DNA of 64,000 nt from Oikopleura dioica (Eukaryota > Animalia > Chordata). The position numbers and the translations under genes are program-made. Numbering within the stretch: the first letter of the stretch is position 1; each line of letters begins with the position of its first letter. Under the pieces are notes generated by a model, which was not told where the DNA came from, made no database searches, and worked only from the letters and a program-made list of their open reading frames with translations. Location: positions 13,330,001 to 13,394,000 of the forward strand of contig OU015566.1 in NCBI GenBank assembly GCA_907165135.1, in the 5' to 3' direction. This document shows, piece after piece, positions 3,348-48,198 of this stretch.

Positions 3348-6300
3348 GAAAATTCCTAAAGAAAAAAAAAATAACTATCATTCAAACTTTTTCAATTGTT
3401 GAAAATTTGAGTTCGAAAGATGCTCTATCAAAGATATGAAAAGAAGTTTTCAAAAAGTTCACGATAACAACTCAACCGAAAAATTTCGCTTTATTTGAAA
3501 ATACCAGATTAAATGATTTCTAAGACGCAAATTGCGGCTCTATTATAGAGAAAATATTAATTAAACCACATGGTTTTGAAAACGTCAGAAAATAAGTGAA
3601 GCTTGAAAATCTGGGGAACCATCAACACATGCGTTCCATTTTCCTTTATATAACGAAGACGTCATTTCAGAAAGAACATCTGAAATAGTATTTATTCCAT
3701 GAATACCCCAGTCAATCAAATATTGATCAAAGAATAAGTGACGCTATTGATGGTACTTTTAATTTGATAGTATGACGCAAATTATATTGCCAAGGTCCCA
3801 TGGTTCAATGGTCGAAATACAACATAATGCGGCTTAAATTGCTAGATGTGCTGAAAAATGAACTCAAAAGAAGCAAAAGAAGCAATTTAGGCTGGCTTGG
3901 GGGTTGTTTAACCCCTGGCTGGTTGTTTAACCCTTGTGGCCGGCTAAGCCAAATAAGGTGCCCCCGGAGTTCCACAAAACGTGCGATAATCCTACTTAGT
4001 TTCTAGTAGAAGCCAAGCTGGAAAAATACACACAGCCTGAATTTCTGAATTCTCGAATATTTGGTTTTCAGACTTTGAAAAAGACCTTCGTAAAGTCGTA
4101 ATAATTCGTGATAGGCCGCCATTTGAAAACGCTAAGGGCAAGATCTGAGAATGTAAATTTATCAGCAATGTAAATCATGCTCAATCAGGGATGAGCTGGA
4201 CATGCCTTCAGCCTTTTTGTTAAAAGACAGATTCTTAAATCATGTAAAAATCATGTCTTTGGAACAAAATTTAGATGAAGTGATATCTTTTAAAAGTCTG
4301 TTTCATACTTAATTTATACGTAAAATACCATTTTAGCACAATAAACGATAGTGTATCAACGATAGAGAACTATCTTTTCACACGTCGAAATTTGATTAAG
4401 ATAAAAAAGTAATAAAAATTGCAGTGATATGATCACTTTATCTCTTTCTCAGTCTCTCTCTGAAATTTTCATTCGAAAATATTTCGAAAATTCGAAAATA
4501 AGGGTATCACTATGTTAAGTCGAAAATCGAATTTTTTTAAGAAAAAAATGACGAAATTGATGTTGACAGCCTTAAGAAACAAATTCTTTTTTTTTTCTTG
4601 AAAGAAGTGATAGTTACAGTAACTTACTGTTTGATTTCTGATTCGGGGCGGCCAGAAGGTCTCTCGGCTTCTAACTAAGTGTCTCTGAAATTTCGTTTGT
4701 TTTTTCCGAAGAAAATCAGTTCTATCTGGACATTAGAGAAAGTCTGTTTCTATTTTTCGTATTCGTTGAAAAAATTGAAAAACACAAATGTTACTCCATT
4801 ACGGATTTACGCGGAGGCGCGCGTTTCGCTCTCCACCACCGCTCTGGCGCCATCGTCCTTTTTTTCTCATCTTTGCAAGCACCACTTTCGATCTCTTTTG
4901 CAGCTCCTGAGACTAGCAATTTCGCGCATTTTCCCGATCAAGCACCAGAATGCACCAGCAACTTGTCATTATCGCGTAACGTGCGCGACACCCGGTTAAC
5001 GAAAAAATGAGCTTAGAAAATTTCCCAGCCACGTTCTTTAGGATCTACCCAGTGAAATTGAAATAACGAGTCATAGATACTGAAATGAGGGGGAATTTAT
5101 CGCCGATGCCGCATTCGACAGAAGCTTTTCGGGCGGATTTTTTTCGACTAAAAATGGTGACATCCTTATTTAGCCTGCTATAAACACTTTAACGGATTAA
5201 ATTCATCCCGAAAAGGATGCCAATTTAACGGATTTTCGAGCTTCTCGAAAAGAGTTCGAAATCTGAAAGGAAAGTGCCAGTGGCAGCTGTCAATTGACTG
5301 CCAAAAGCTGCCGATTCCGACACTATATATAAAAATTTAAAGTCAAACTAAGTTCAAAACAGTCTTAACAACAAGTTAAACATATAAAAGAGACGTTATT
5401 CGAAATATAAACGTCTCTTTTGATAAGTAAAATGGAATAAAATAGATCTCGGAAAATCTCCAATAACGAATTTTGATGTTTTTGACGTCAAATTTTGAAA
5501 ACTGAAAATAAATAATAACTATTATTTCTTCTGAGAAAAAACCATCTTGGCTGGGTCAACTTAATTTTGTTAGTTAGTGATAACACGAAGAATGTATCGT
5601 GTGTTTTAGGAAGCTCAACTAAGCAAATTGCCGGGCTATGACAAAGCTGGGGAGAACATGTTCTTAGTAAATTATTGATTGAACGCGAATTTATGTTGAA
5701 AACATAGCGCGAGTCACGATTTACGTAACTGCTAATAGAAAGGTTATTCGGTAAGTTGGTGAAGTCTCTGTCGATTTTTTATTGAGCTTTGATCGTGACT
5801 GATACCTTTTGACAACTTTTGACTGTTTTTCCCGTCTGACACAAATGAACTCTCAATATTCCGAAAGTAATGGACCATTACTAATAGTGCTTAAAAACGG
5901 TGAGCGATTTATAAAAATGACTAGCTCAAGAAATTCTCATGAGTATAATATTTTCGTCCGACGATGACTGCCTTGGAAATTCTATTTTGAAATTGTGTTT
6001 TTGACTGACTCACCATCACGTCGAAAACGGAGATGAAATTTAATCAATCAATCGGCAGTTTCCTTGTCCGCTAATAATGACGTATTACAAGAATGAGGAA
6101 ATTCTCCGAGAAAACGCTTCACCCAAAAGCTTTAATTGAAATGATCTTTGTTTTCCTCGAAAAAGATAATTGATCAAGATACTTCAGCAATAAATATAAG
6201 GCATTAGCTCAAAGGATAGTTGATGTTTTCTTTAAAAATTCAAACATATTGTACCTGTTCTTACGCTAGACGAAAGGTTGTTAAAGAAACCTGTGAGAAG

Positions 6301-40630: not shown

Positions 40631-40762
40631 TAACTGTAGTAGAAAAATTCTAGATAGGCGTAAAAGTGAAGGAGGAATGAGAAAAGGTGAAAAGGATAAG
40701 ATTCAATTGGTCTAAAAACATTCTTGAAAAGGTGCTAAAGGGGAGTGATAAAGATAAGTGTT

Positions 40763-41796
40763 CTAGTTGCTCTTTGGCTTGATACTCTTGGGCTTGGAAT
40801 AAGCTTGGACCCAGAAGCCAGCAAAGAGGTAGAAAAATAGGATTCCGTAGAGCGCGATGATCATCTTGAACGGACCTGGATAGCTGCAACTTGGGAAGCG
40901 GATCATGATGTTTGCCATGTGACCGACGACGATGACGAATTGGGTCTGAATGAAGTTCACGTTGGGTATTGATTACTGCTCTTACCATTTGAAAGGTAGT
41001 GAGGTACTTCTTCCACCAAAGATATTTTCTGTATTCTGGTCCCAACGCACTCATTCCGTAATAGAAGTACATGACAAAATGCACCAGGCAGTTGACCCAA
41101 GCGTGGAAGGTACCCAATCCGCCGGGTGAAATTTTAACTCCCCACCACCAAGTGTAAGCCATCAAAGTGTGGTGCACCACGTGAAGGGTTGATACTTGAT
41201 TCCATTTTTGCTTCAAAATGAAAAAATACTAAAACGAAATAAATGATGTGAGTCAACATTGGTCATGGTACCGTGTCGAAGAATTCGATGTGTTTGGAAA
41301 TCCAAAAGACCCAAGAAACTCGGATCATCCTCTCGTTTACTGGGTCTTCCTTACTGTACTCTTCGCATTCGAAAGAATAGCCGTTCCACCAACCAGCAGC
41401 GCCGAACTAGAATTTTTCATCACTTAACTTCATAATTATTAATTATTTGATCTACCTCGTAAAACATCCATCCGGAAAGCGCAACAAGAGCCATGTTGTA
41501 AAGAAAAAGAAATCTGCGAAATTCGAAGGGCTTTCTGTTCTTCATGAACGATGGGCCGCCATAATACACGATATAAAGATACAGTAACACCGACACTGTA
41601 TTCCACAAGGGGTTATCCATCAGCGGGTATTTTGCAACTCGCGGATCTGAAATTTTTTGAGCACGAAAAAATTTTTTATGAAAATTTGCCTCAAGTGAAG
41701 TTTTTTAATTTCATCTTATAAAAATATCGAAAGAAAGGTGAGTTTACCTGCGTGCGAAAGTGCCTCTTCATATTTGGACCTCAAAAAGTCGATCAT
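40763..41796 (-). CDS. ELOVL: Very-long-chain fatty acid elongase, copy 2 (uninterrupted)
   Basis: [16 protein letters not shown] start, KHIEFFDT, LHVVHHTLM, NCLVHFVMYFYY, LTTFQM and a KPKSN-stop tail; same intron positions as copy 1. Confidence 0.92.
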
Positions 41797-43037
41797 CTTC
41801 TCGACTCAATTCGATTTCAATTCTGAAGTAGCTTCGAGTTAGTCATCGTCTGTAGGAATTTACAAGCAGTAATTCACTAATTGTTTTTGGCATGTCGCCT
41901 TAGTTACACGAATTTGCGAAAATAACTAGTCATTCTTGCAATCATAGAAGATATTTTTTCAAGAAAAGCATATTTCTATAAGTTCTACTGGTAGTTTCGC
42001 TCTGTATAATTTTCTCTATTATTTCCTCTGAAAACATCGAAAAAAAAGTAAAACGCCCTGGCCTCAATTGACAATAGCCGCTGCTTAATCATCTCAATTA
42101 GATTTTTTTATTGCTCCTCTTTTGTCTCTCTGAAAATTCGTAAAAACGCGCGCCGCAACTTTACGAAAATATAAAAAAAATCGTACGAGCTCATTTCAAA
42201 AATTCAACAACGAGTCAAATATTGAGCAACGGCATTTCCAACCAGAAATGACTCACGATTTAAACAAACGACCAAAAGTCATGCTCCCTACTTCGCTTTT
42301 TCTAACAGTGCAAACAAAGTTTTTATCTGCGAAGGAAGTTAGGTTTAATACCATTGTAATTGATCATAATAAGGAGTTTATGGCATCCTAAGATAAGCTA
42401 TTCGAGAAAGATTACGAGTTGTTATGAAAATTTACCGGTTTTTGAGACTACTTCCATCAATTCTCGTCAGAAAACCGGGCATATGTTCACATAACAGAGC
42501 GTAAGCGCAAATGTGTTTTGATGAGGGAAATCGTATGCGATTCTCAGCTGTATTCTAAGAGCAAATGGCTCTTTACGCAGGCTCGATAATTGAGCTTTTC
42601 AATCAAATAGAAACTTGTTTGTTTTCATAAGGTATGGTAAGAGTAACGCTGTTCCAACTGAATGCAACGAGAAAATGACGGCGAAACGAACTGAACTTTT
42701 AATCAAATAGGCTATTTGAAATAGCTCATCTCCGATTGATTCTGAATCATGTAAGACCAAGTAAGAGACTAATTGTTTTCTATTTTCAAAGTGGCCTAAG
42801 AGTTTAATTAATTCAGTGGTTTGACAAAAGACTATTCAATTTCACACCTGAGTTCTGATAAATACCAAGCTGCTCCCGACAAAACTCACCGGCTTTCTGA
42901 TTATTGATAATACATAATCTTGGATAAGAAATCAAAATAATTGAAGATAAACTTTTCAATCAACTTAAGTAAGTTCACTATTGATGCGAATAAAAGAACA
43001 TTGATTTCTCCCGGATAAATAACAGTTTATTAATCGA

Positions 43038-46000
43038 TTACTCATCATCAGGGTTACATACATCAGCTACAGTGCTAGTACCAGCGCCATTGCCTTCTTC
43101 CGTTCTGTTGTCTTTCGAAAAATGTTCTCCAATCGACATTCCAAGCAGCGGTCTAAGAGTCTTCTTTAGCGAGTGGAATAGATGCGGGTGGAGAATCTCC
43201 TGCTGCGCTAGAAGCTGCTTCATTCGGTTTCGCTCTTTTGGCTCAGAGAAACAAGCAGGGCAGTTTTCTGGAATCACAGGCAGCTAAAGATAAAAGTTCT
43301 CATCCTTGATTCCAATTTTGGTTAATCAAACCTTGTTGCTCTCGGCAAAGGCCCTTGTTTCCGTTTCACGAACAAATGCAAGCGGCCTTATGACGCGCAA
43401 ATCCCCGGCTTTTACTGTATAATTCGCTTTCATCGTGAATAACTGAGAGTTGTGAAATGCCGACATAAGAAAGCTCTCCGCACAATCGTCCAAATGTTGT
43501 CTAAAGACAGTGTAATCTTTATATTATAAAGTTTATAATGTCTCTAATCTATGAGAATCAGAACTAATTTCTGTCAGATAAATTATTGTGGACCCGTTAT
43601 CTTGCGACTTAATTGTTAGATAGACATCATTCTACCTTTTTTAGACTCGTTAATTTGTTTTGCTCGAAAGTAATTGCGCGATAAATCTGATCAAATACGT
43701 TGATATTTCTATGATTATCGCAATTAAAACTTATGTAAAAAAGCATGAGAATAAAAGACTCACCCAAGCGCTAGAACATTCCATTTGCCTTCCCTCATCG
43801 CCGAGTACATGATTCCTCTTTTCATTCGACTACAGTAGCTGCAGATCGATCTCAAATCCGGCAGCTTCTGTGCGTTTGCAAAAATTGGCTCTTCTTTGTA
43901 AATGTATTCTACTCCCAATTCTTCCATATATTCAATCAGCGAGGAAGGATCGTAAGATGCCACTTGTGGGTCTACTGTCAACGCACCAACGGTAAAGTCC
44001 ATCTTCCTAAAAAAATACGCGTCACGGACTTCTACAAATACACGGTCTAATGCTTTCTTTGAAAAATATATTGAGAATCTCAATTTGAAATCGATAAGTA
44101 TCTATCTGGATTATATCAAAAAATAAGTGAGACGAATAGAGAAAACGTGATGAAATACGACATTCAAAGAATAGACTCCTCTAATTCACGCCTCAGTGTA
44201 TTTTTAATAAAAAGTCAAATTAAAATATTCAAAACTCACAACGTATGTCTCGCGATATGACGATATTGCAACAACGCGTGAATCAGCGTCATCGAGTCTT
44301 TTCCCCCCGAGAGTCCGACAATAACTCGGTCTCCGTTTTTGATCATTTCGAATTCTTCGATCGCGTCACCGACTTTTCGCATCAGCACTTTTGGCGGATG
44401 AATCGGTCGCCGCTTCTTTCGTTTTTCGCCATTTGACGCGCCATTTTCTACTTTTTCAGAGTTCAACACTGCTCAGAAATATAACTCAAAGAAAATCGAA
44501 CCTTTTAACCCTTTCCTTTAGCTTTCTTCTTCCTGGGCAGCAAGCAAGGAACACAGACATCATCTGTGCATTCTTGCTCTTCAACTTTTTCATTCTTTCG
44601 CTTCTCCGCATTTTTAGTCTTTTCCTTCTTTAGCTCATTTTTCTTCTCCGGCTCGGCTTTTATCACCGACTTCGACCAGCTGGACACTTTTTTCAATTTT
44701 TCCACCAACTTGGAGTCGAGCTCATATGACTCGTAATTATTCTAAATCATCAAATGATCAGAGATTTTAAGGCCTTTTACCTTTGGAATAGATTTTCGGA
44801 CAACAAATGGCGATTTCTTCAAGTTATCAAAAAGTTTATTCTTCCTCAGCAAGTCCCGCGCCTCTGAAGGCAACAAAAACCACCTGAGCTCATGCGCCTC
44901 TCCTTGGAAACCAGTGCTTTGGTCCGATTGACCAGCTTTTGGTCGGTTTTTCTGAGCAATCTTCTCCGCTGCTTCGAGCGCTTCTTTGAGCGTCTTGCAA
45001 TCTGTTCCGTTTATTTTATTCGCGTCAGTAGGTTCTTTCACTTCCACACCGCTTTTCGAGAAGCGGATGTCGCCGAGCCAGCGACGATCGGAGTACGAGA
45101 GGTTCAGGGAGTGTTTCCATTCGCCGGTTTCGCAGTCGAAGACGTAGTGGCTCAGTAGCTTCCAGCCGTGTTCTGCAACCCATTTTATGGACTAAAGATT
45201 GGTTAGGGCAATCATTCAAGTTTAAAACCGGGAAGGTTAGTGATGGCTGTAGAAGTGTACCTGTAAAACTTCATCAACAAGTGAGTCTTCAAAGAAATAC
45301 GGCAACGAAAATCTGACGAATCCTGGCCGAAGAATTTCAAACTCTGACGATTCCCTTGCCCTTCTTAAATGAATTCTGTCCAGCCGCGAGTCCTCCAAGA
45401 GAATCTTTTCAAATCTCTGCACCAAAGACGAGTCTTTCTCCGTTCTCATGCCGATCAGTTCCATTCCATAAGGGCCAGCGCAAACGCAGCCGCCGCGCAC
45501 TTGAATTCCGAACAAGTCGTTTAGGAGGGCGGAGACGTAGTTGTAATGCAAGTACAGGTCGCTATCGGGGACGCGAATCATGAAGGAAAAGATTGGTAGG
45601 CGATCGGCGATCTCTCCAGCGAGAACTTCCAAGTTCGGGATAGAATTCAGGACGGAAAGGGCTTTCTTTGCAATTTCTTCTTCTCGCGAGAAAATAACAT
45701 CAGAACTAAAAGGATGATAATTATTGTTATTTCTCACTGCTCACCTGATTGATTCCTTGAGTTGCATGATCATGCCGCACCTGATTGATCCTACCAGATC
45801 TTCAGAGTGGATCAAAAGAACTCATCCTACGAGAAAGCGATCGAAAATTATAAAACAATAAATATTCGTCAGTGCAGATAGCCAATAAAATTCAATTATG
45901 GGCTGCTGCAGCCTTGTACCGTGTTTCTTTTCTTATTACAATAAAAATGAGCATTCTTTGATCCTGTCCTGGAGTGCCTGGTTCTTCCCGCTCTTCAGCC

Positions 46001-47145
46001 TCTGCCAGAAAACGATGGTTCTCTTGAGAGACCCAAAAGACAGTTCCGCCACCGCCGCCCCCGTGAGGAACTTTGTTTTTGAAAAGCTTTTTGGCTGCCA
46101 CTAGAATTCCAGGAGTGTTCACGCCGCCGGGGAACTTGTGTGGGGAGAAGAAAATTGCGTCTTTTGAAAGGGATGATAGGATTTCAAAGAATAATTATAT
46201 TTTTTGACTATTTAACTTTCTGGCACCCTCTTTATGACAGAAAAAAGTTTGAGCCTATATCTCGGTCTCCTAATTGCTAGAAAAATGAACATCCCTCGCC
46301 TTTGGAAGAGTTTGGCTCTTTCGGGTGCATGTCAATTTTAACATAGGGCGCAGCTGTTGCATAATCGAAAATCGCCAATCCATCGTATTTGTGCATGATT
46401 TGCGCGAGCTTGATTGTGTCCGACAAAATACCAGTAACATTGCTCGCCGCCGAAAAGCAACCGATCAAGGGAAGGCCAGTCGAGGACCATTTCTGAAGTT
46501 TGAAATCAAGCTCGTCGTAATCTGGCTGACCGAGCTGATTTTCGCGAATTCGCTCGACGTGGCAATTCGCGTTGAGCCACGGCAACTCGGCGGAATGGTG
46601 CTCCGATGGGCCGACGAAAACGACCGGCGGAGTTGATAGACCCATCGCGGAAATTAAAAGTTGAATGCCACCAGTTGAACCGCTCCCGGTGAAAATAACG
46701 GCGTCGTTTTCTGATGCTTTGAGAGCATTTCGAACAATTGTTCTTGCTTCGTGGCGGTAAAGGGTTGACTGCAAACCGGTGATCGAAGAAGTCGTGTGAG
46801 TGTTGGCATATGTTGGCAGAACCTGAAGATTTTTAAGTTGCATTGACTGCTCTTGCTAATCAAATCGAAATGAAGTCCGAGTAGGCTAGATCTAGTCTAG
46901 ATTACCTGTTGACTGATGAAATTTTCAATAAATTCTAGCGGCCTTCCTGAAGCAGTATGATCACAGTAGACGATGCTTCTTTTTCCGAACGCTGTAACGA
47001 AAGAATGATCCTTTCCGATTTCGTTTTCTCTGACGAGTTCGATGAGTTCTTCGGGAGTGGCGGAAGAATTCAGCGGCGGACGGGCCGAGTGATCGCGTTT
47101 CGGAAGAGTGTAAAAGTTACGATTCCCAAGCGACTCAGAATCCAT
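43038..47145 (-). CDS. Fusion of a class V aminotransferase/cysteine desulfurase domain and a TtcA-type PP-loop tRNA sulfurtransferase
   Basis: N-terminal half: [35 protein letters not shown] (PLP Lys), [11 protein letters not shown]-terminal half: [35 protein letters not shown]. An in-frame splice path links all exons, including a 47-nt GA-AG intron at 44515-44469. Confidence 0.85.
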
Positions 47146-47365
47146 CTATTTTTTGCTTCTTTTTAGTTAAAAATAGAGGAGAGAGCTTTTCAAAATTGCA
47201 CCGAGAGAGGGAATTATACAGGAAATTATTCAGAACGTTTTTGGGGAGCAGAAATAATAACAAGTTTGAAATTAAAGAGCGGAAATAAAAAAGCAACTGA
47301 ACAGTGAATTTCACGACTAAACTTAAAAATACCCTGAAGAAAATTATTCAGACGAAAAATTGGAT

Positions 47366-48198
47366 TTAAGGATCGATGGTAATATGCTTCTGAAGAATGA
47401 TAAGGTAGTAGTACAAAAACGCGGGCACGCAAATCACCACAACGACGCCGCATAGTCCTGAAAATCAACTGTATATCGACTTTGAGATTCCTAGCGAATC
47501 GTCTTACCTAAGTAACACCATTCAGTGCTTTCGGAGTTTTGCTCGTATCGGCCGAATTTGGGAAGAACAGCGACGGGTGGGAGATTTCCCAAAAACTCGT
47601 TCAATCTATTTTCTGATTGCTGGCGAATTTCGGCTTCGGTTAGAGGGTGGCGGATTCCGATTGAGGAGACTTTGTGAACTGCTTCTTGGTTTGACTTGTC
47701 TGGATAAACATGAGTGAAATAAAGGTGAATTCTAGTTCTACCTATTCTATCGAAAATTGCATCCGTAGCTGCAGTAGCATCGCCAATGGAGGAGGACGTT
47801 TCAGAGTCTTGGATTTGATCTTCAATATTCTAAATTTTCAAATAGAACTGATTATCCGCTGCGCCAAGATTACCACAAGAAGATCAGTCGGAACAGCGGT
47901 TAATCTTCTGTCTGGAATGAGAATTTCTTTCTTTGTAATCAAATCCGAATCGGTGAATAAATTGTTCAGACGTTTCAATTCTTCCTTTGATACTGCGAAT
48001 CTCAGCGCAATCGACTAGTTTCTTGTAATGTTTTTGAAAAAGGGGCTTTTTCTATACCTCGAGTGTTTCGTCCGCCTGAACTTTGTATCTGATCGTCTCT
48101 ACCGTCTCTAGTTTCGGCGTTTTCCTAACTCGGGACCTTCTTTCTGATATTTCCGACGCTTCAAGAAGAGGAATTTCGTCTTCATCCTTTTTTCCCAT
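47366..48198 (-). CDS. LysM-domain protein with a C-terminal TM helix (LYSMD3/4-like)
   Basis: Not in the ORF track. Spliced product contains YKVQADETLESIALRFAVSKEELKRLNNLF..LIP (LysM) and ends WCYLGLCGVVVVICVPAFLYYYLII; four short GT-AG introns. Confidence 0.8.

What the first reader, a model, noticed from the sequence alone, without database searches (positions are those of the whole stretch)
43038..47145. Eukaryotic cysteine desulfurase-TtcA fusion: a possible self-contained tRNA thiolation (s2C32) enzyme
Seen: one in-frame spliced ORF joins a PLP domain (SPHK Lys near 46135-46146, putative persulfide Cys in [10 protein letters not shown] near 45478-45498) to a PP-loop domain (SGGKDS near 44293-44310) with two CxxC motifs (CSYC near 43832-43843, CPAC near 43252-43263) and no terminal zinc fingers. 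The join relies on a 47-nt GA-AG intron. Established: bacterial TtcA is an Fe-S enzyme making 2-thiocytidine at tRNA position 32 with sulfur from IscS, and s2C is not a standard eukaryotic tRNA modification; CTU1/Ncs6 and TtuA carry extra zinc-finger CxxC motifs. Inference: the protein carries its own sulfur donor and may install s2C or another thio-modification in an animal. I recall similar architectures in other invertebrates but cannot verify this here.
Basis: partly seen in the sequence, partly recalled or inferred. Interest (0 to 1): 0.8.

Follow-up and report, generated by a model that had tools for sequence, protein, structure and literature searches.

The report
Oikopleura desulfurase–TtcA fusion gene
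This is one real 11-exon gene in an Oikopleura-type tunicate that fuses a SufS-like cysteine desulfurase to a TtcA-like tRNA thiolation domain, but the same fusion occurs across animals and was described in a 2026 preprint, so this copy is an ordinary ortholog.

Summary
On the minus strand, 47145-43038, eleven exons encode an N-terminal PLP domain of SufS/CsdA type (SPHK lysine, [10 protein letters not shown]). A Lys/Glu-rich linker with a Cys motif follows, then a C-terminal TtcA-like PP-loop domain (SGGKDS, CSYC, CPAC).

The domain join is in frame for every plausible splice choice. RNA reads gave no coverage, so the evidence is comparative:
- A sister-lineage contig (L009) carries all exons in the same order.
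- The codons upstream of the first in-frame ATG of the TtcA part are under purifying selection.
- Two more distant appendicularian lineages have the linker motif and the TtcA start in one uninterrupted open frame.

The genome holds 49 exact copies of the Oikopleura dioica spliced leader as I recalled it. That identifies the host and explains the GC-AG and GA-AG introns.

The architecture is not new. Nearly all of the 120 best full-length relatives carry both domains, from sponges and cnidarians to amphioxus, plus one stramenopile. Several are auto-named TtcA. A September 2026 preprint describes the Aplysia fusion together with s2C32 in tRNA-Lys.

s2C32 synthesis with a built-in sulfur donor is the best reading but is untested here. 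Small additions: the catalytic Cys aligns with that of SufS, and the linker holds a position-conserved Cys.

The parts
46906..47145 (-). Exon 1, with the start ATG at 47145. It is followed by an 83-nt GT-AG intron (46905-46823).
   Evidence: tblastn of animal homologs aligns from about their residue 4-24 to residue 2-8 of this exon. It is 96% identical to L009, with 34 synonymous against 3 amino-acid-changing codons.
46300..46822 (-). Exon 2, the core of the PLP domain ([10 protein letters not shown]...EHHS...). Its donor is GC at 46299, opening a 139-nt GC-AG intron (46299-46161).
   Evidence: Pfam Aminotran_5 at 6.7e-16 and SufS TIGR01979 at 1.9e-13. In L009 this intron is absent and [12 protein letters not shown] is contiguous. 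That confirms the GC donor over the GT donor at 46290, which would give ...GEG-Y-AIFF.
45969..46160 (-). Exon 3, with the PLP-binding Lys in SPHK (46146-46135). Its donor is GA at 45968, opening a 169-nt GA-AG intron (45968-45800).
   Evidence: The family profile aligns 'sphKf' to SufS 'SGHKM'. The GTP|D|LVGSIR junction matches Saccoglossus and Trichoplax GTPDIVGSIR. No GT donor exists in the required phase.
45745..45799 (-). Exon 4, a 55-nt mini-exon (D)[17 protein letters not shown], followed by a 39-nt GT-AG intron (45744-45706).
   Evidence: tblastn. L009 is 94% identical.
45261..45705 (-). Exon 5, with the active-site loop [10 protein letters not shown] (45497-45468), followed by a 69-nt GT-AG intron.
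   Evidence: The profile-to-PDB alignment places the family's 'RGGcaCAGP' on SufS 'RAGHHCAQP'. The second Cys is therefore the SufS catalytic Cys. Both Cys are invariant in 50 homologs.
44781..45191 (-). Exon 6, a family-specific extension after the PLP fold ([10 protein letters not shown]...ETGEWKH...RRWLG...[10 protein letters not shown]), followed by a 39-nt GT-AG intron.
   Evidence: Conserved in all animal homologs. It is well folded in the AlphaFold2 model of the Nematostella homolog, residues about 440-580.
44510..44741 (-). Exon 7, the Lys/Glu-rich linker ending in [19 protein letters not shown] (Cys motif at 44570-44544). The exon ends at 44516 with the GA donor or at 44510 with the GT donor. 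The in-frame TAA lies at 44507-44505, inside the intron.
   Evidence: The last 20 codons show 11 synonymous against 1 amino-acid change versus L009. 95 of 140 fused homologs have a Cys 50-63 residues before SGGKDS, against 23-40 in control windows.
44451..44515 (-). The junction intron between the two domains. All are phase 1.
   Evidence: In L009 the spacer is about 201 nt, cannot be aligned and contains stops, but it keeps the donor AAAG|GA and the acceptor AAAAG|TG in the same phase. In L089-L092 there is no intron here at all. The window's spacer has no AATAAA or ATTAAA.
44240..44468 (-). Exon 8, the start of the TtcA-like domain (…[27 protein letters not shown]…) with the PP-loop SGGKDS at 44310-44293. 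It is followed by a 233-nt GT-AG intron.
   Evidence: NF007972 positions 11-69 at 1.3e-14, with homology starting 14 residues before the first in-frame Met. The 18 codons upstream of that Met show 6 synonymous against 3 changing codons, plus an in-frame 6-nt indel versus L009.
43764..44006 (-). Exon 9, with CSYC (43843-43832), followed by a 263-nt GT-AG intron.
   Evidence: It aligns to E. coli TtcA C122-x-x-C125. Both are [4Fe-4S] ligands per PMC4081106.
43332..43500 (-). Exon 10 (QHLDD...MKANYTV...DLRVIRP), followed by a 48-nt GT-AG intron.
   Evidence: NF007972 positions 154-206 at 3.2e-10. It is 100% identical to L009 with 29 synonymous codon differences.
43038..43283 (-). Exon 11, with CPAC (43262-43251) and the stop TAA at 43040-43038.
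   Evidence: It aligns to E. coli TtcA C219-x-x-C222, where C222 is an essential cluster ligand.
43026..43031 (-). AATAAA polyadenylation-type hexamer, beginning 7 nt after the stop codon.
   Evidence: Read from the sequence. No such hexamer follows the internal TAA at 44505.

Best explanation
A single gene of an Oikopleura dioica-type appendicularian encodes a protein of about 986-994 residues. It is the ortholog of a eukaryote-wide fusion family.

Domain layout (shown):
- N-terminus: a PLP-dependent, type II (SufS/CsdA-like) cysteine desulfurase domain with a family-specific extension.
- Middle: a disordered basic linker with a conserved Cys motif.
- C-terminus: a TtcA-like PP-loop ATP pyrophosphatase with the three [4Fe-4S]-ligand cysteines.

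Mechanism (inferred):
1. The N-domain takes sulfur from L-cysteine as a persulfide on the Cys of GGCxCAGPY.
2. The sulfur passes in cis, directly or through the linker cysteines, to the open iron of the [4Fe-4S] cluster of the C-domain.
3. The C-domain adenylates C32 of certain cytoplasmic tRNAs and replaces O2 by sulfur, giving 2-thiocytidine.
For: Domains:
- Pfam and NCBIfam place the exons on Aminotran_5/SufS and colinearly on TtcA.
- A profile of the family aligns best to solved SufS structures (8d8s 2.6e-32, 7e6d). The PLP Lys and the catalytic Cys match.
- The alignment with E. coli TtcA conserves SGGKDS, C122/C125 and C219/C222. C122, C125 and C222 are the essential cluster ligands (PMC4081106).
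- 129 of 140 columns invariant in 50 fused homologs are kept. The 3 left unaligned are the last codon of exon 2 and two split junction codons, which the splice model restores.

Fusion:
- Closest full-length relatives are 900-1300 aa with PF00266 plus PF01171.
- The sister contig L009 has all 11 exons colinear.
- The codons before the first in-frame ATG of the TtcA part are under purifying selection.
- In L089-L092 the motif (C)TDEVCLPCMAPR... runs without stop or intron into ...[23 protein letters not shown]...SGGKDS.
- Two out-of-frame ATGs precede that Met, and no poly(A) hexamer follows the internal TAA.

Function: s2C32 was reported in Aplysia tRNA-Lys-UUU alongside the homologous fused gene (preprint).

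Host: 49 exact copies of the recalled O. dioica spliced leader in a 64.28-Mb, 19-contig genome.
Against: - No transcript evidence for this genome. Four RNA runs carrying the species label put only 2 partial reads on 4.8 kb.
- The exact donor and acceptor of the junction intron are unresolved.
- TtcA-model scores stay under NCBIfam's equivalog cut-off. Relatives reach 198-210 bits against 272. The window's three matched exons sum to about 141 bits.
- No member of the fusion family has been assayed. The preprint links gene and s2C only by co-occurrence.
- The active-site loop (GGCxCAGPY) differs from the SufS loop (R-x-G-H-H-C-A).
- The AlphaFold2 model of a homolog leaves the linker, Cys motif included, unstructured. 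It says nothing about domain contact.
Confidence: 0.7

Rival explanations
1. There are two separate cistrons, a desulfurase-like gene ending at TAA 44505 and a TtcA gene starting at Met 'MRKVG'. They would be resolved from an Oikopleura operon by SL trans-splicing at the AG at 44469 or 44451.
For: An in-frame stop separates the two parts. The organism trans-splices, with 49 SL copies. No RNA evidence for the splice was obtained.
Against: - The 18 codons upstream of the Met are conserved as protein and belong to the TtcA homology.
- Two out-of-frame ATGs precede the Met.
- No poly(A) hexamer lies in the 36-54-nt spacer.
- The phase-compatible donor and acceptor are kept in L009 although the spacer there is about four times longer.
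- The junction is one continuous open frame in L089-L092.
- Essentially all animal relatives are fused.
Confidence: 0.05
2. The protein is fused, but its product is not s2C32. The PP-loop domain might thiolate another tRNA position or another substrate. Alternatively, the PLP domain might not feed it, acting for example as a selenocysteine lyase or being regulatory, with sulfur coming from NFS1.
For: TtcA-model scores are below the equivalog cut-off. The desulfurase loop is atypical. No enzymology exists for the family. The preprint's link between gene and modification is correlative.
Against: TtcA is by far the best model, with near full-length coverage and all ligand Cys conserved. s2C32 was found in an animal that has the fusion. 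The PLP Lys, the EHHS histidines and the aligned catalytic Cys are invariant in 50 homologs. That argues for an active desulfurase-type enzyme.
Confidence: 0.2
3. A decaying or unexpressed gene copy.
For: Almost no RNA reads were laid. The sister contig L009 carries an in-frame TAA in exon 6.
Against: All 11 exons are open. Across the exons compared without gaps (1-4 and 9-11), 241 codons differ synonymously against 28 that change the amino acid versus L009. 129 of 140 invariant family columns are kept. It is a single copy in the genome. The runs used may be from a divergent lineage, so the empty lay is no test.
Confidence: 0.03

Closest known systems
Aplysia californica 'IscS-TtcA' fused protein LOC101861551 and its animal homologs (bioRxiv 10.64898/2026.09.27.754811)
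   Same: Same order of domains, with the CsdA/SufS-like PLP domain followed by a poorly conserved linker and then the TtcA-like domain. Same conserved residues: PLP Lys, C-x-C in the PLP domain, SGGKDS, CS[FY]C and CPAC. Exon 2 is 50-60% identical to mollusc, hemichordate and amphioxus proteins.
   Different: The protein is shorter, about 990 aa against 1177, with a linker of about 120 rather than 405 residues. The host is a tunicate. Several introns are non-canonical. The first Cys of the mollusc 'C-CSFC-CPAC' pattern (VCLSGG) is Gly here. The preprint did not identify the desulfurase Cys. Here it aligns to the SufS catalytic Cys.
Bacterial TtcA (E. coli b1344), tRNA-cytidine(32) 2-sulfurtransferase
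   Same: PP-loop, GxHxDD, C122/C125/C222-equivalent cluster ligands and no zinc fingers. It is the best-scoring curated family.
   Different: The four TtcA-like exons are only 22-43% identical to E. coli TtcA. The score is below the equivalog cut-off. Bacterial TtcA is a stand-alone protein of about 311 aa that depends on IscS/IscU in trans. Here it is the C-terminal third of a fusion.
Type II cysteine desulfurases SufS/CsdA
   Same: The fold family is the best PDB match. The PLP Lys, the His-His of EHHxN and the position of the catalytic Cys are shared.
   Different: The loop reads RGGCxCAGPY instead of RxGHHCA. There is an extra conserved C-terminal extension of about 130 residues. No SufE/SufU/CsdE partner domain is present. 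Scores are far below the SufS cut-offs.
CTU1/Ncs6/NcsA and TtuA (s2U34 and s2T54 PP-loop thiolases)
   Same: The same PP-loop superfamily and a three-Cys [4Fe-4S] site.
   Different: Those enzymes carry N- and C-terminal CxxC zinc fingers and take sulfur from Urm1/TtuB-type carriers. This domain lacks the fingers and scores far lower on their models. A true CTU1-type gene lies on another chromosome, at L004 1354-1851.
ThiI (s4U8 synthase with a fused rhodanese domain)
   Same: A precedent for a PP-loop tRNA thiolase that carries its own persulfide-bearing module in cis. This rests on my own knowledge and was not tested here.
   Different: ThiI's module is a rhodanese that still needs IscS. Here the fused module is itself the PLP desulfurase-type enzyme.

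Membership tests
TtcA (NCBIfam NF007972, tRNA 2-thiocytidine(32) synthetase) | PP-loop SGGxDS | tested here: met
   SGGKDS at 44310-44293. It aligns to E. coli SGGKDS.
TtcA (NCBIfam NF007972, tRNA 2-thiocytidine(32) synthetase) | Three [4Fe-4S] ligand cysteines (E. coli C122, C125, C222) | tested here: met
   CSYC and CPAC align to C122/C125 and C219/C222. The ligands are as given in PMC4081106.
TtcA (NCBIfam NF007972, tRNA 2-thiocytidine(32) synthetase) | Score at or above the curated equivalog cut-off (272 bits) | tested here: not met
   The exons give 54.2 + 47.2 + 39.8 bits. Whole domains of five relatives give 198-210 bits. It is TtcA-like rather than a certified equivalog.
TtcA (NCBIfam NF007972, tRNA 2-thiocytidine(32) synthetase) | Best match among PP-loop thiolase families and no terminal zinc fingers | tested here: met
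   Relatives score about 200 bits on TtcA, against 56-63 on TilS, 47-61 on TtuA and 21-34 on NcsA. No CxxC...CxxC precedes the PP-loop domain.
TtcA (NCBIfam NF007972, tRNA 2-thiocytidine(32) synthetase) | Makes s2C at tRNA position 32 | not testable with these tools
   The only support is the preprint's detection of s2C32 in Aplysia, which has the homolog.
Type II cysteine desulfurase (SufS/CsdA) | PLP-binding Lys in S-x-H-K and class-V aminotransferase fold | tested here: met
   SPHK at 46146-46135. Pfam Aminotran_5 gives 58.6 bits against a cut-off of 21.5 for exon 2. The profile aligns to SufS structures.
Type II cysteine desulfurase (SufS/CsdA) | Catalytic Cys in the short active-site loop | tested here: met
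   The second Cys of [10 protein letters not shown] aligns to the Cys of SufS RAGHHCAQP. It is invariant in 50 homologs. The surrounding loop sequence differs.
Type II cysteine desulfurase (SufS/CsdA) | Score above the SufS/CsdA curated cut-offs | tested here: not met
   TIGR01979 gives 50 bits (exon 2) and 21.9 bits (exon 5) against a cut-off of 475. This is a distinct subfamily.
Eukaryotic desulfurase-TtcA fusion family | Both domains in one polypeptide, with the PLP domain N-terminal | tested here: met
   The splice model is in frame. Coding selection crosses the junction. The open frame is continuous across the junction in L089-L092. Direct RNA evidence was not obtained.
Eukaryotic desulfurase-TtcA fusion family | Family-invariant residues | tested here: met
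   129 of 140 invariant columns are kept and 8 are changed. The 3 unaligned ones are the last codon of exon 2 and two split junction codons, which the splice model restores.
CTU1/Ncs6 | N-terminal CxxC...CxxC zinc finger before the PP-loop | tested here: not met
   It is absent here. It is present in the separate gene L004 1354-1851 (MPRKICENCN...CRECF...GASGGKDS).

The most novel reading that the evidence does not exclude
The position-conserved cysteine(s) in the disordered basic linker (here [16 protein letters not shown], about 50-63 residues before the PP-loop) might act as a built-in swinging persulfide carrier. It would play the part of SufE/CsdE/TusA between the buried SufS-type cysteine and the TtcA cluster. 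The enzyme would then be a complete one-polypeptide sulfur relay from cysteine to tRNA.
Probability: 0.2. Interest if true: 0.55.

Novelty: new member of a known kind. Interest (0 to 1): 0.3.

Why it matters
The gene adds a tunicate, from a very fast-evolving chordate lineage, to a fusion family that runs from sponges to amphioxus and probably makes s2C32. That modification was long thought to be absent from eukaryotes. Retention under strong purifying selection in a genome as streamlined as Oikopleura's argues that the function matters.

Three points could help whoever characterises the family:
- The desulfurase cysteine is identified by alignment to SufS.
- The linker carries a conserved cysteine.
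- Appendicularian relatives have the junction inside a single exon.

The finding itself is a correct annotation rather than a discovery.

Tried and rejected
- Read laying on 42700-47500 with three oligo-dT RNA runs and one single-cell run of the same species label laid 2 partial reads in all. This is no test, probably because the runs are from a divergent lineage or expression is low.
- Complex prediction of the two domains of the Trichoplax homolog was not folded, under a tool rule about pairing chains. It gives no evidence either way.
- phmmer of exon 5 alone against the PDB found nothing. The family profile did.
- The ESM Atlas look-up of exon 9 gave only weak PP-loop fragments.
- The AlphaFold2 model of the Nematostella homolog folds both domains (mean pLDDT 74.6, pTM 0.62). 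The linker and its Cys motif stay at pLDDT about 30, so there is no support for a docked motif.
- A GT donor at 46290 for intron 2 is rejected. The intron-less L009 shows K-D-A, which only the GC donor gives.
- Reading the gene as a CTU1 homolog is rejected.
- HGT or contamination was considered. Identity to animal homologs is 50-60%, the gene sits among spliced Oikopleura genes, and the fusion is shared across animals. Vertical descent is therefore the simple reading. No tree was built.
- All searches were exon by exon or used homologs.
Full report
**What is there.** The minus strand between 47145 and 43038 carries a string of open exon-sized frames. Pfam calls the 188-aa frame at 46280-46843 Aminotran_5 (6.7e-16). 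Weaker hits of the same family lie on two further frames. Weak PP-loop hits lie on the frames at 44239-44469 and 43329-43493. NCBIfam is sharper. The first group matches SufS/CsdA-type desulfurases. Three downstream frames fall colinearly on the TtcA model NF007972 at positions 11-69, 69-150 and 154-206.

**Gene model.** I laid six full-length animal homologs on the window with tblastn. This gives eleven exons:
- E1 47145-46906
- E2 46822-46300
- E3 46160-45969
- E4 45799-45745
- E5 45705-45261
- E6 45191-44781
- E7 44741-44516 or 44510
- E8 44468 or 44450 to 44240
- E9 44006-43764
- E10 43500-43332
- E11 43283-43038

The lengths sum to 2961-2985 nt, in frame, so 986-994 residues. Two introns need non-GT donors. 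GC at 46299 gives K|D-AIFFSPHK, as in all homologs. GA at 45968 gives GTP|D|LVGSIR. An AATAAA follows the final stop (43031-43026). None follows the internal TAA at 44505.

**Whose genome.** The assembly has 64,281,565 bases in 19 contigs. This is therefore an O. dioica-type appendicularian. From my own knowledge, that group is noted for very short introns, G*-AG non-canonical introns, operons and trans-splicing. This explains the GC-AG and GA-AG introns. It also makes the rival 'two cistrons of an operon' worth testing.

**Is it really one gene?** RNA evidence failed. Comparative evidence fills the gap.

1. A marine-metagenome contig, L009 (Ga0115008_10007361), is a sister lineage. It holds all eleven exons in the same order and strand at 79-100% amino-acid identity.
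   - Intron 2 is absent there, and [12 protein letters not shown] is contiguous. This proves the GC-AG splice.
   - Codon comparison shows near-saturated synonymous change with few replacements in every exon.
   - The last 20 codons of E7 show 11 synonymous against 1 replacement.
   - The 18 codons of E8 upstream of the first in-frame ATG show 6 synonymous against 3 replacements, plus an in-frame 6-nt indel.
   - That stretch also belongs to the TtcA homology and holds the PPK motif shared by all animal homologs.
   - It has no in-frame ATG, and two out-of-frame ATGs precede the Met. It can therefore only be translated by entry from E7.
2. The spacer is 41-65 nt here and about 201 nt in L009. 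It cannot be aligned and is full of stops. Both lineages nevertheless keep the donor AAAG|GA and the acceptor AAAAG|T(A/G) in phase 1.
3. A word search with E8 found short gene calls from more distant appendicularians. On their contigs (L089, L090, L091, L092; the last two are from the Tara Oceans marine metagenome project PRJEB4352) the frame runs without stop. It goes from ...(C)TDEVCLPCMAPR(A/E)KK... straight into ...[23 protein letters not shown]...SGGKDS. Where the contig reaches upstream of the PLP region (L089, L090), Aminotran_5 exons lie there on the same strand. In those lineages the join lies inside one exon.

I put the fusion at about 0.95. Which donor and acceptor are used here is open. 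The linker length of the intron-less relatives fits best with GA at 44515 plus the acceptor at 44451.

**What the domains are.** A profile of the PLP domain of eight homologs plus exon 5 (A1) finds SufS-type cysteine desulfurases as the best solved structures (8d8s 2.6e-32; B. subtilis SufS 7e6d). It aligns 'sphKf' to the PLP lysine and 'RGGcaCAGP' to 'RAGHHCAQP'. The second Cys of [10 protein letters not shown] is thus the counterpart of the SufS catalytic cysteine. The preprint compared with IscS and did not locate this residue.

The C-terminal domain aligns to E. coli TtcA with SGGKDS, C122/C125 (CSYC) and C219/C222 (CPAC) conserved. C122, C125 and C222 are the essential [4Fe-4S] ligands (PMC4081106). 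Whole C-domains of five homologs score as follows:

| NCBIfam model | Bits |
|---|---|
| TtcA (cut-off 272) | 198-210 |
| TilS | 56-63 |
| TtuA | 47-61 |
| NcsA | 21-34 |

So the domain is TtcA-like and not CTU1-like, but it is not a certified equivalog. A genuine CTU1-type gene with the N-terminal zinc finger sits on another contig. The PLP exon is single-copy. The window keeps 129 of 140 columns that are invariant in 50 fused homologs.

**How new is it?** A profile-free search of 1.84 billion representatives with exon 2 gave mostly relatives of 700-1300 aa. Of nine long ones scanned, five carried PF00266 plus PF01171. A search with the Tegillarca protein returned 120 best hits. Nearly all carry both domains. 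They include:
- molluscs, Lingula and annelids
- hemichordates and echinoderms
- Branchiostoma
- cnidarians, sponges and Trichoplax
- arthropods and tardigrades

A stramenopile, Chrysoparadoxa, has the fusion too. Several are auto-named 'tRNA 2-thiocytidine biosynthesis protein TtcA' or 'tRNA-cytidine(32) 2-sulfurtransferase'.

The bioRxiv preprint 10.64898/2026.09.27.754811 (28 Sept 2026) does three things. It reports s2C at position 32 of Aplysia tRNA-Lys-UUU as the first eukaryotic s2C. It describes the 1177-aa CsdA plus TtcA-like protein LOC101861551 and its fused homologs in 28 molluscs and beyond. It proposes a dedicated fused enzyme. This window adds a tunicate ortholog.

**Mechanism.**
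- Shown: the domain identities, the catalytic residues, the fusion, and purifying selection.
- Inferred: persulfide formation on the GGCxC cysteine, transfer in cis to the cluster of the TtcA-like domain, and ATP-dependent adenylation and thiolation of C32.

One extra observation bears on the transfer step. 95 of 140 fused homologs have a cysteine 50-63 residues before SGGKDS, against 23-40 in equal control windows of the linker. It is often a C-x4-C followed by hydrophobic and basic residues. In Oikopleura this is [16 protein letters not shown], unchanged in protein between the window and L009 apart from one residue before the motif, despite 11 synonymous differences in those 20 codons. It could be a flexible persulfide carrier. 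The AlphaFold2 model of the Nematostella homolog leaves it disordered. The complex prediction was not run by the tool. This remains a hypothesis at about 0.2.

**Verdict.** Novelty is low: a new member of a known, recently described family. The joined protein model was not sent to any tool.

Noticed in passing
window 46299-46161, 45968-45800, 44515-44451; also 45744-45706 and 44780-44742: Non-canonical introns sit in one gene. One is GC-AG, confirmed by its absence in L009. One is GA-AG, and the domain junction is probably GA-AG too. Two GT-AG introns are only 39 nt long. In L009 the intron matching 45968-45800 starts with neither GT nor GA; it reads CC..AG, or GC..AA if slid by one base.
   Followed up: partly
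L009 3297-3317, 4143-4235, 4871-4901: The sister-lineage contig has a 10-nt tandem unit (TGACCTYAAA) in three different introns of this gene. One is a roughly 270-nt GA-AG intron inside exon 6 that the window lacks. Another is the expanded junction intron. The pattern TGACCNNNANTGACC is absent from the whole window. It looks like a lineage-specific repeat filling or creating introns.
   Followed up: partly
L009, within about 4440-4460 (the codon matching the window's Gln in [11 protein letters not shown], exon 6): There is an in-frame TAA in the sister contig where the window has CAA. The downstream exons remain conserved as protein. It is probably an assembly or read error, or a rare allele, rather than a split gene.
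   Followed up: partly
window 44570-44523: A linker motif [16 protein letters not shown], with a second basic run GEKRKKRR in exon 8. It is a position-conserved Cys across fused homologs and also resembles a bipartite nuclear localisation signal.
   Followed up: partly
G000:C5:8887253-8887582 (L004 1354-1851): A CTU1/Ncs6-type gene with an N-terminal CxxC...CxxC zinc finger and GASGGKDS. It is the only other match to the TtcA model in the genome.
   Followed up: partly
window 40653-41216 (-): The next recognisable gene downstream on the same strand is an ELO/GNS1-SUR4 fatty-acid elongase exon (Pfam 8.8e-23).
   Followed up: no
G000, e.g. C1:8116655-8117250, C4:8484302-8484830: The 49 exact spliced-leader copies often come as inverted pairs 0.5-2 kb apart. 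This suggests SL RNA genes arranged in inverted repeats.
   Followed up: no
L089 361-1949: On the more distant appendicularian contig, the genes upstream of the fusion gene include Glycos_transf_2 and Ricin_B_lectin calls. These are different neighbours from those in the window.
   Followed up: no
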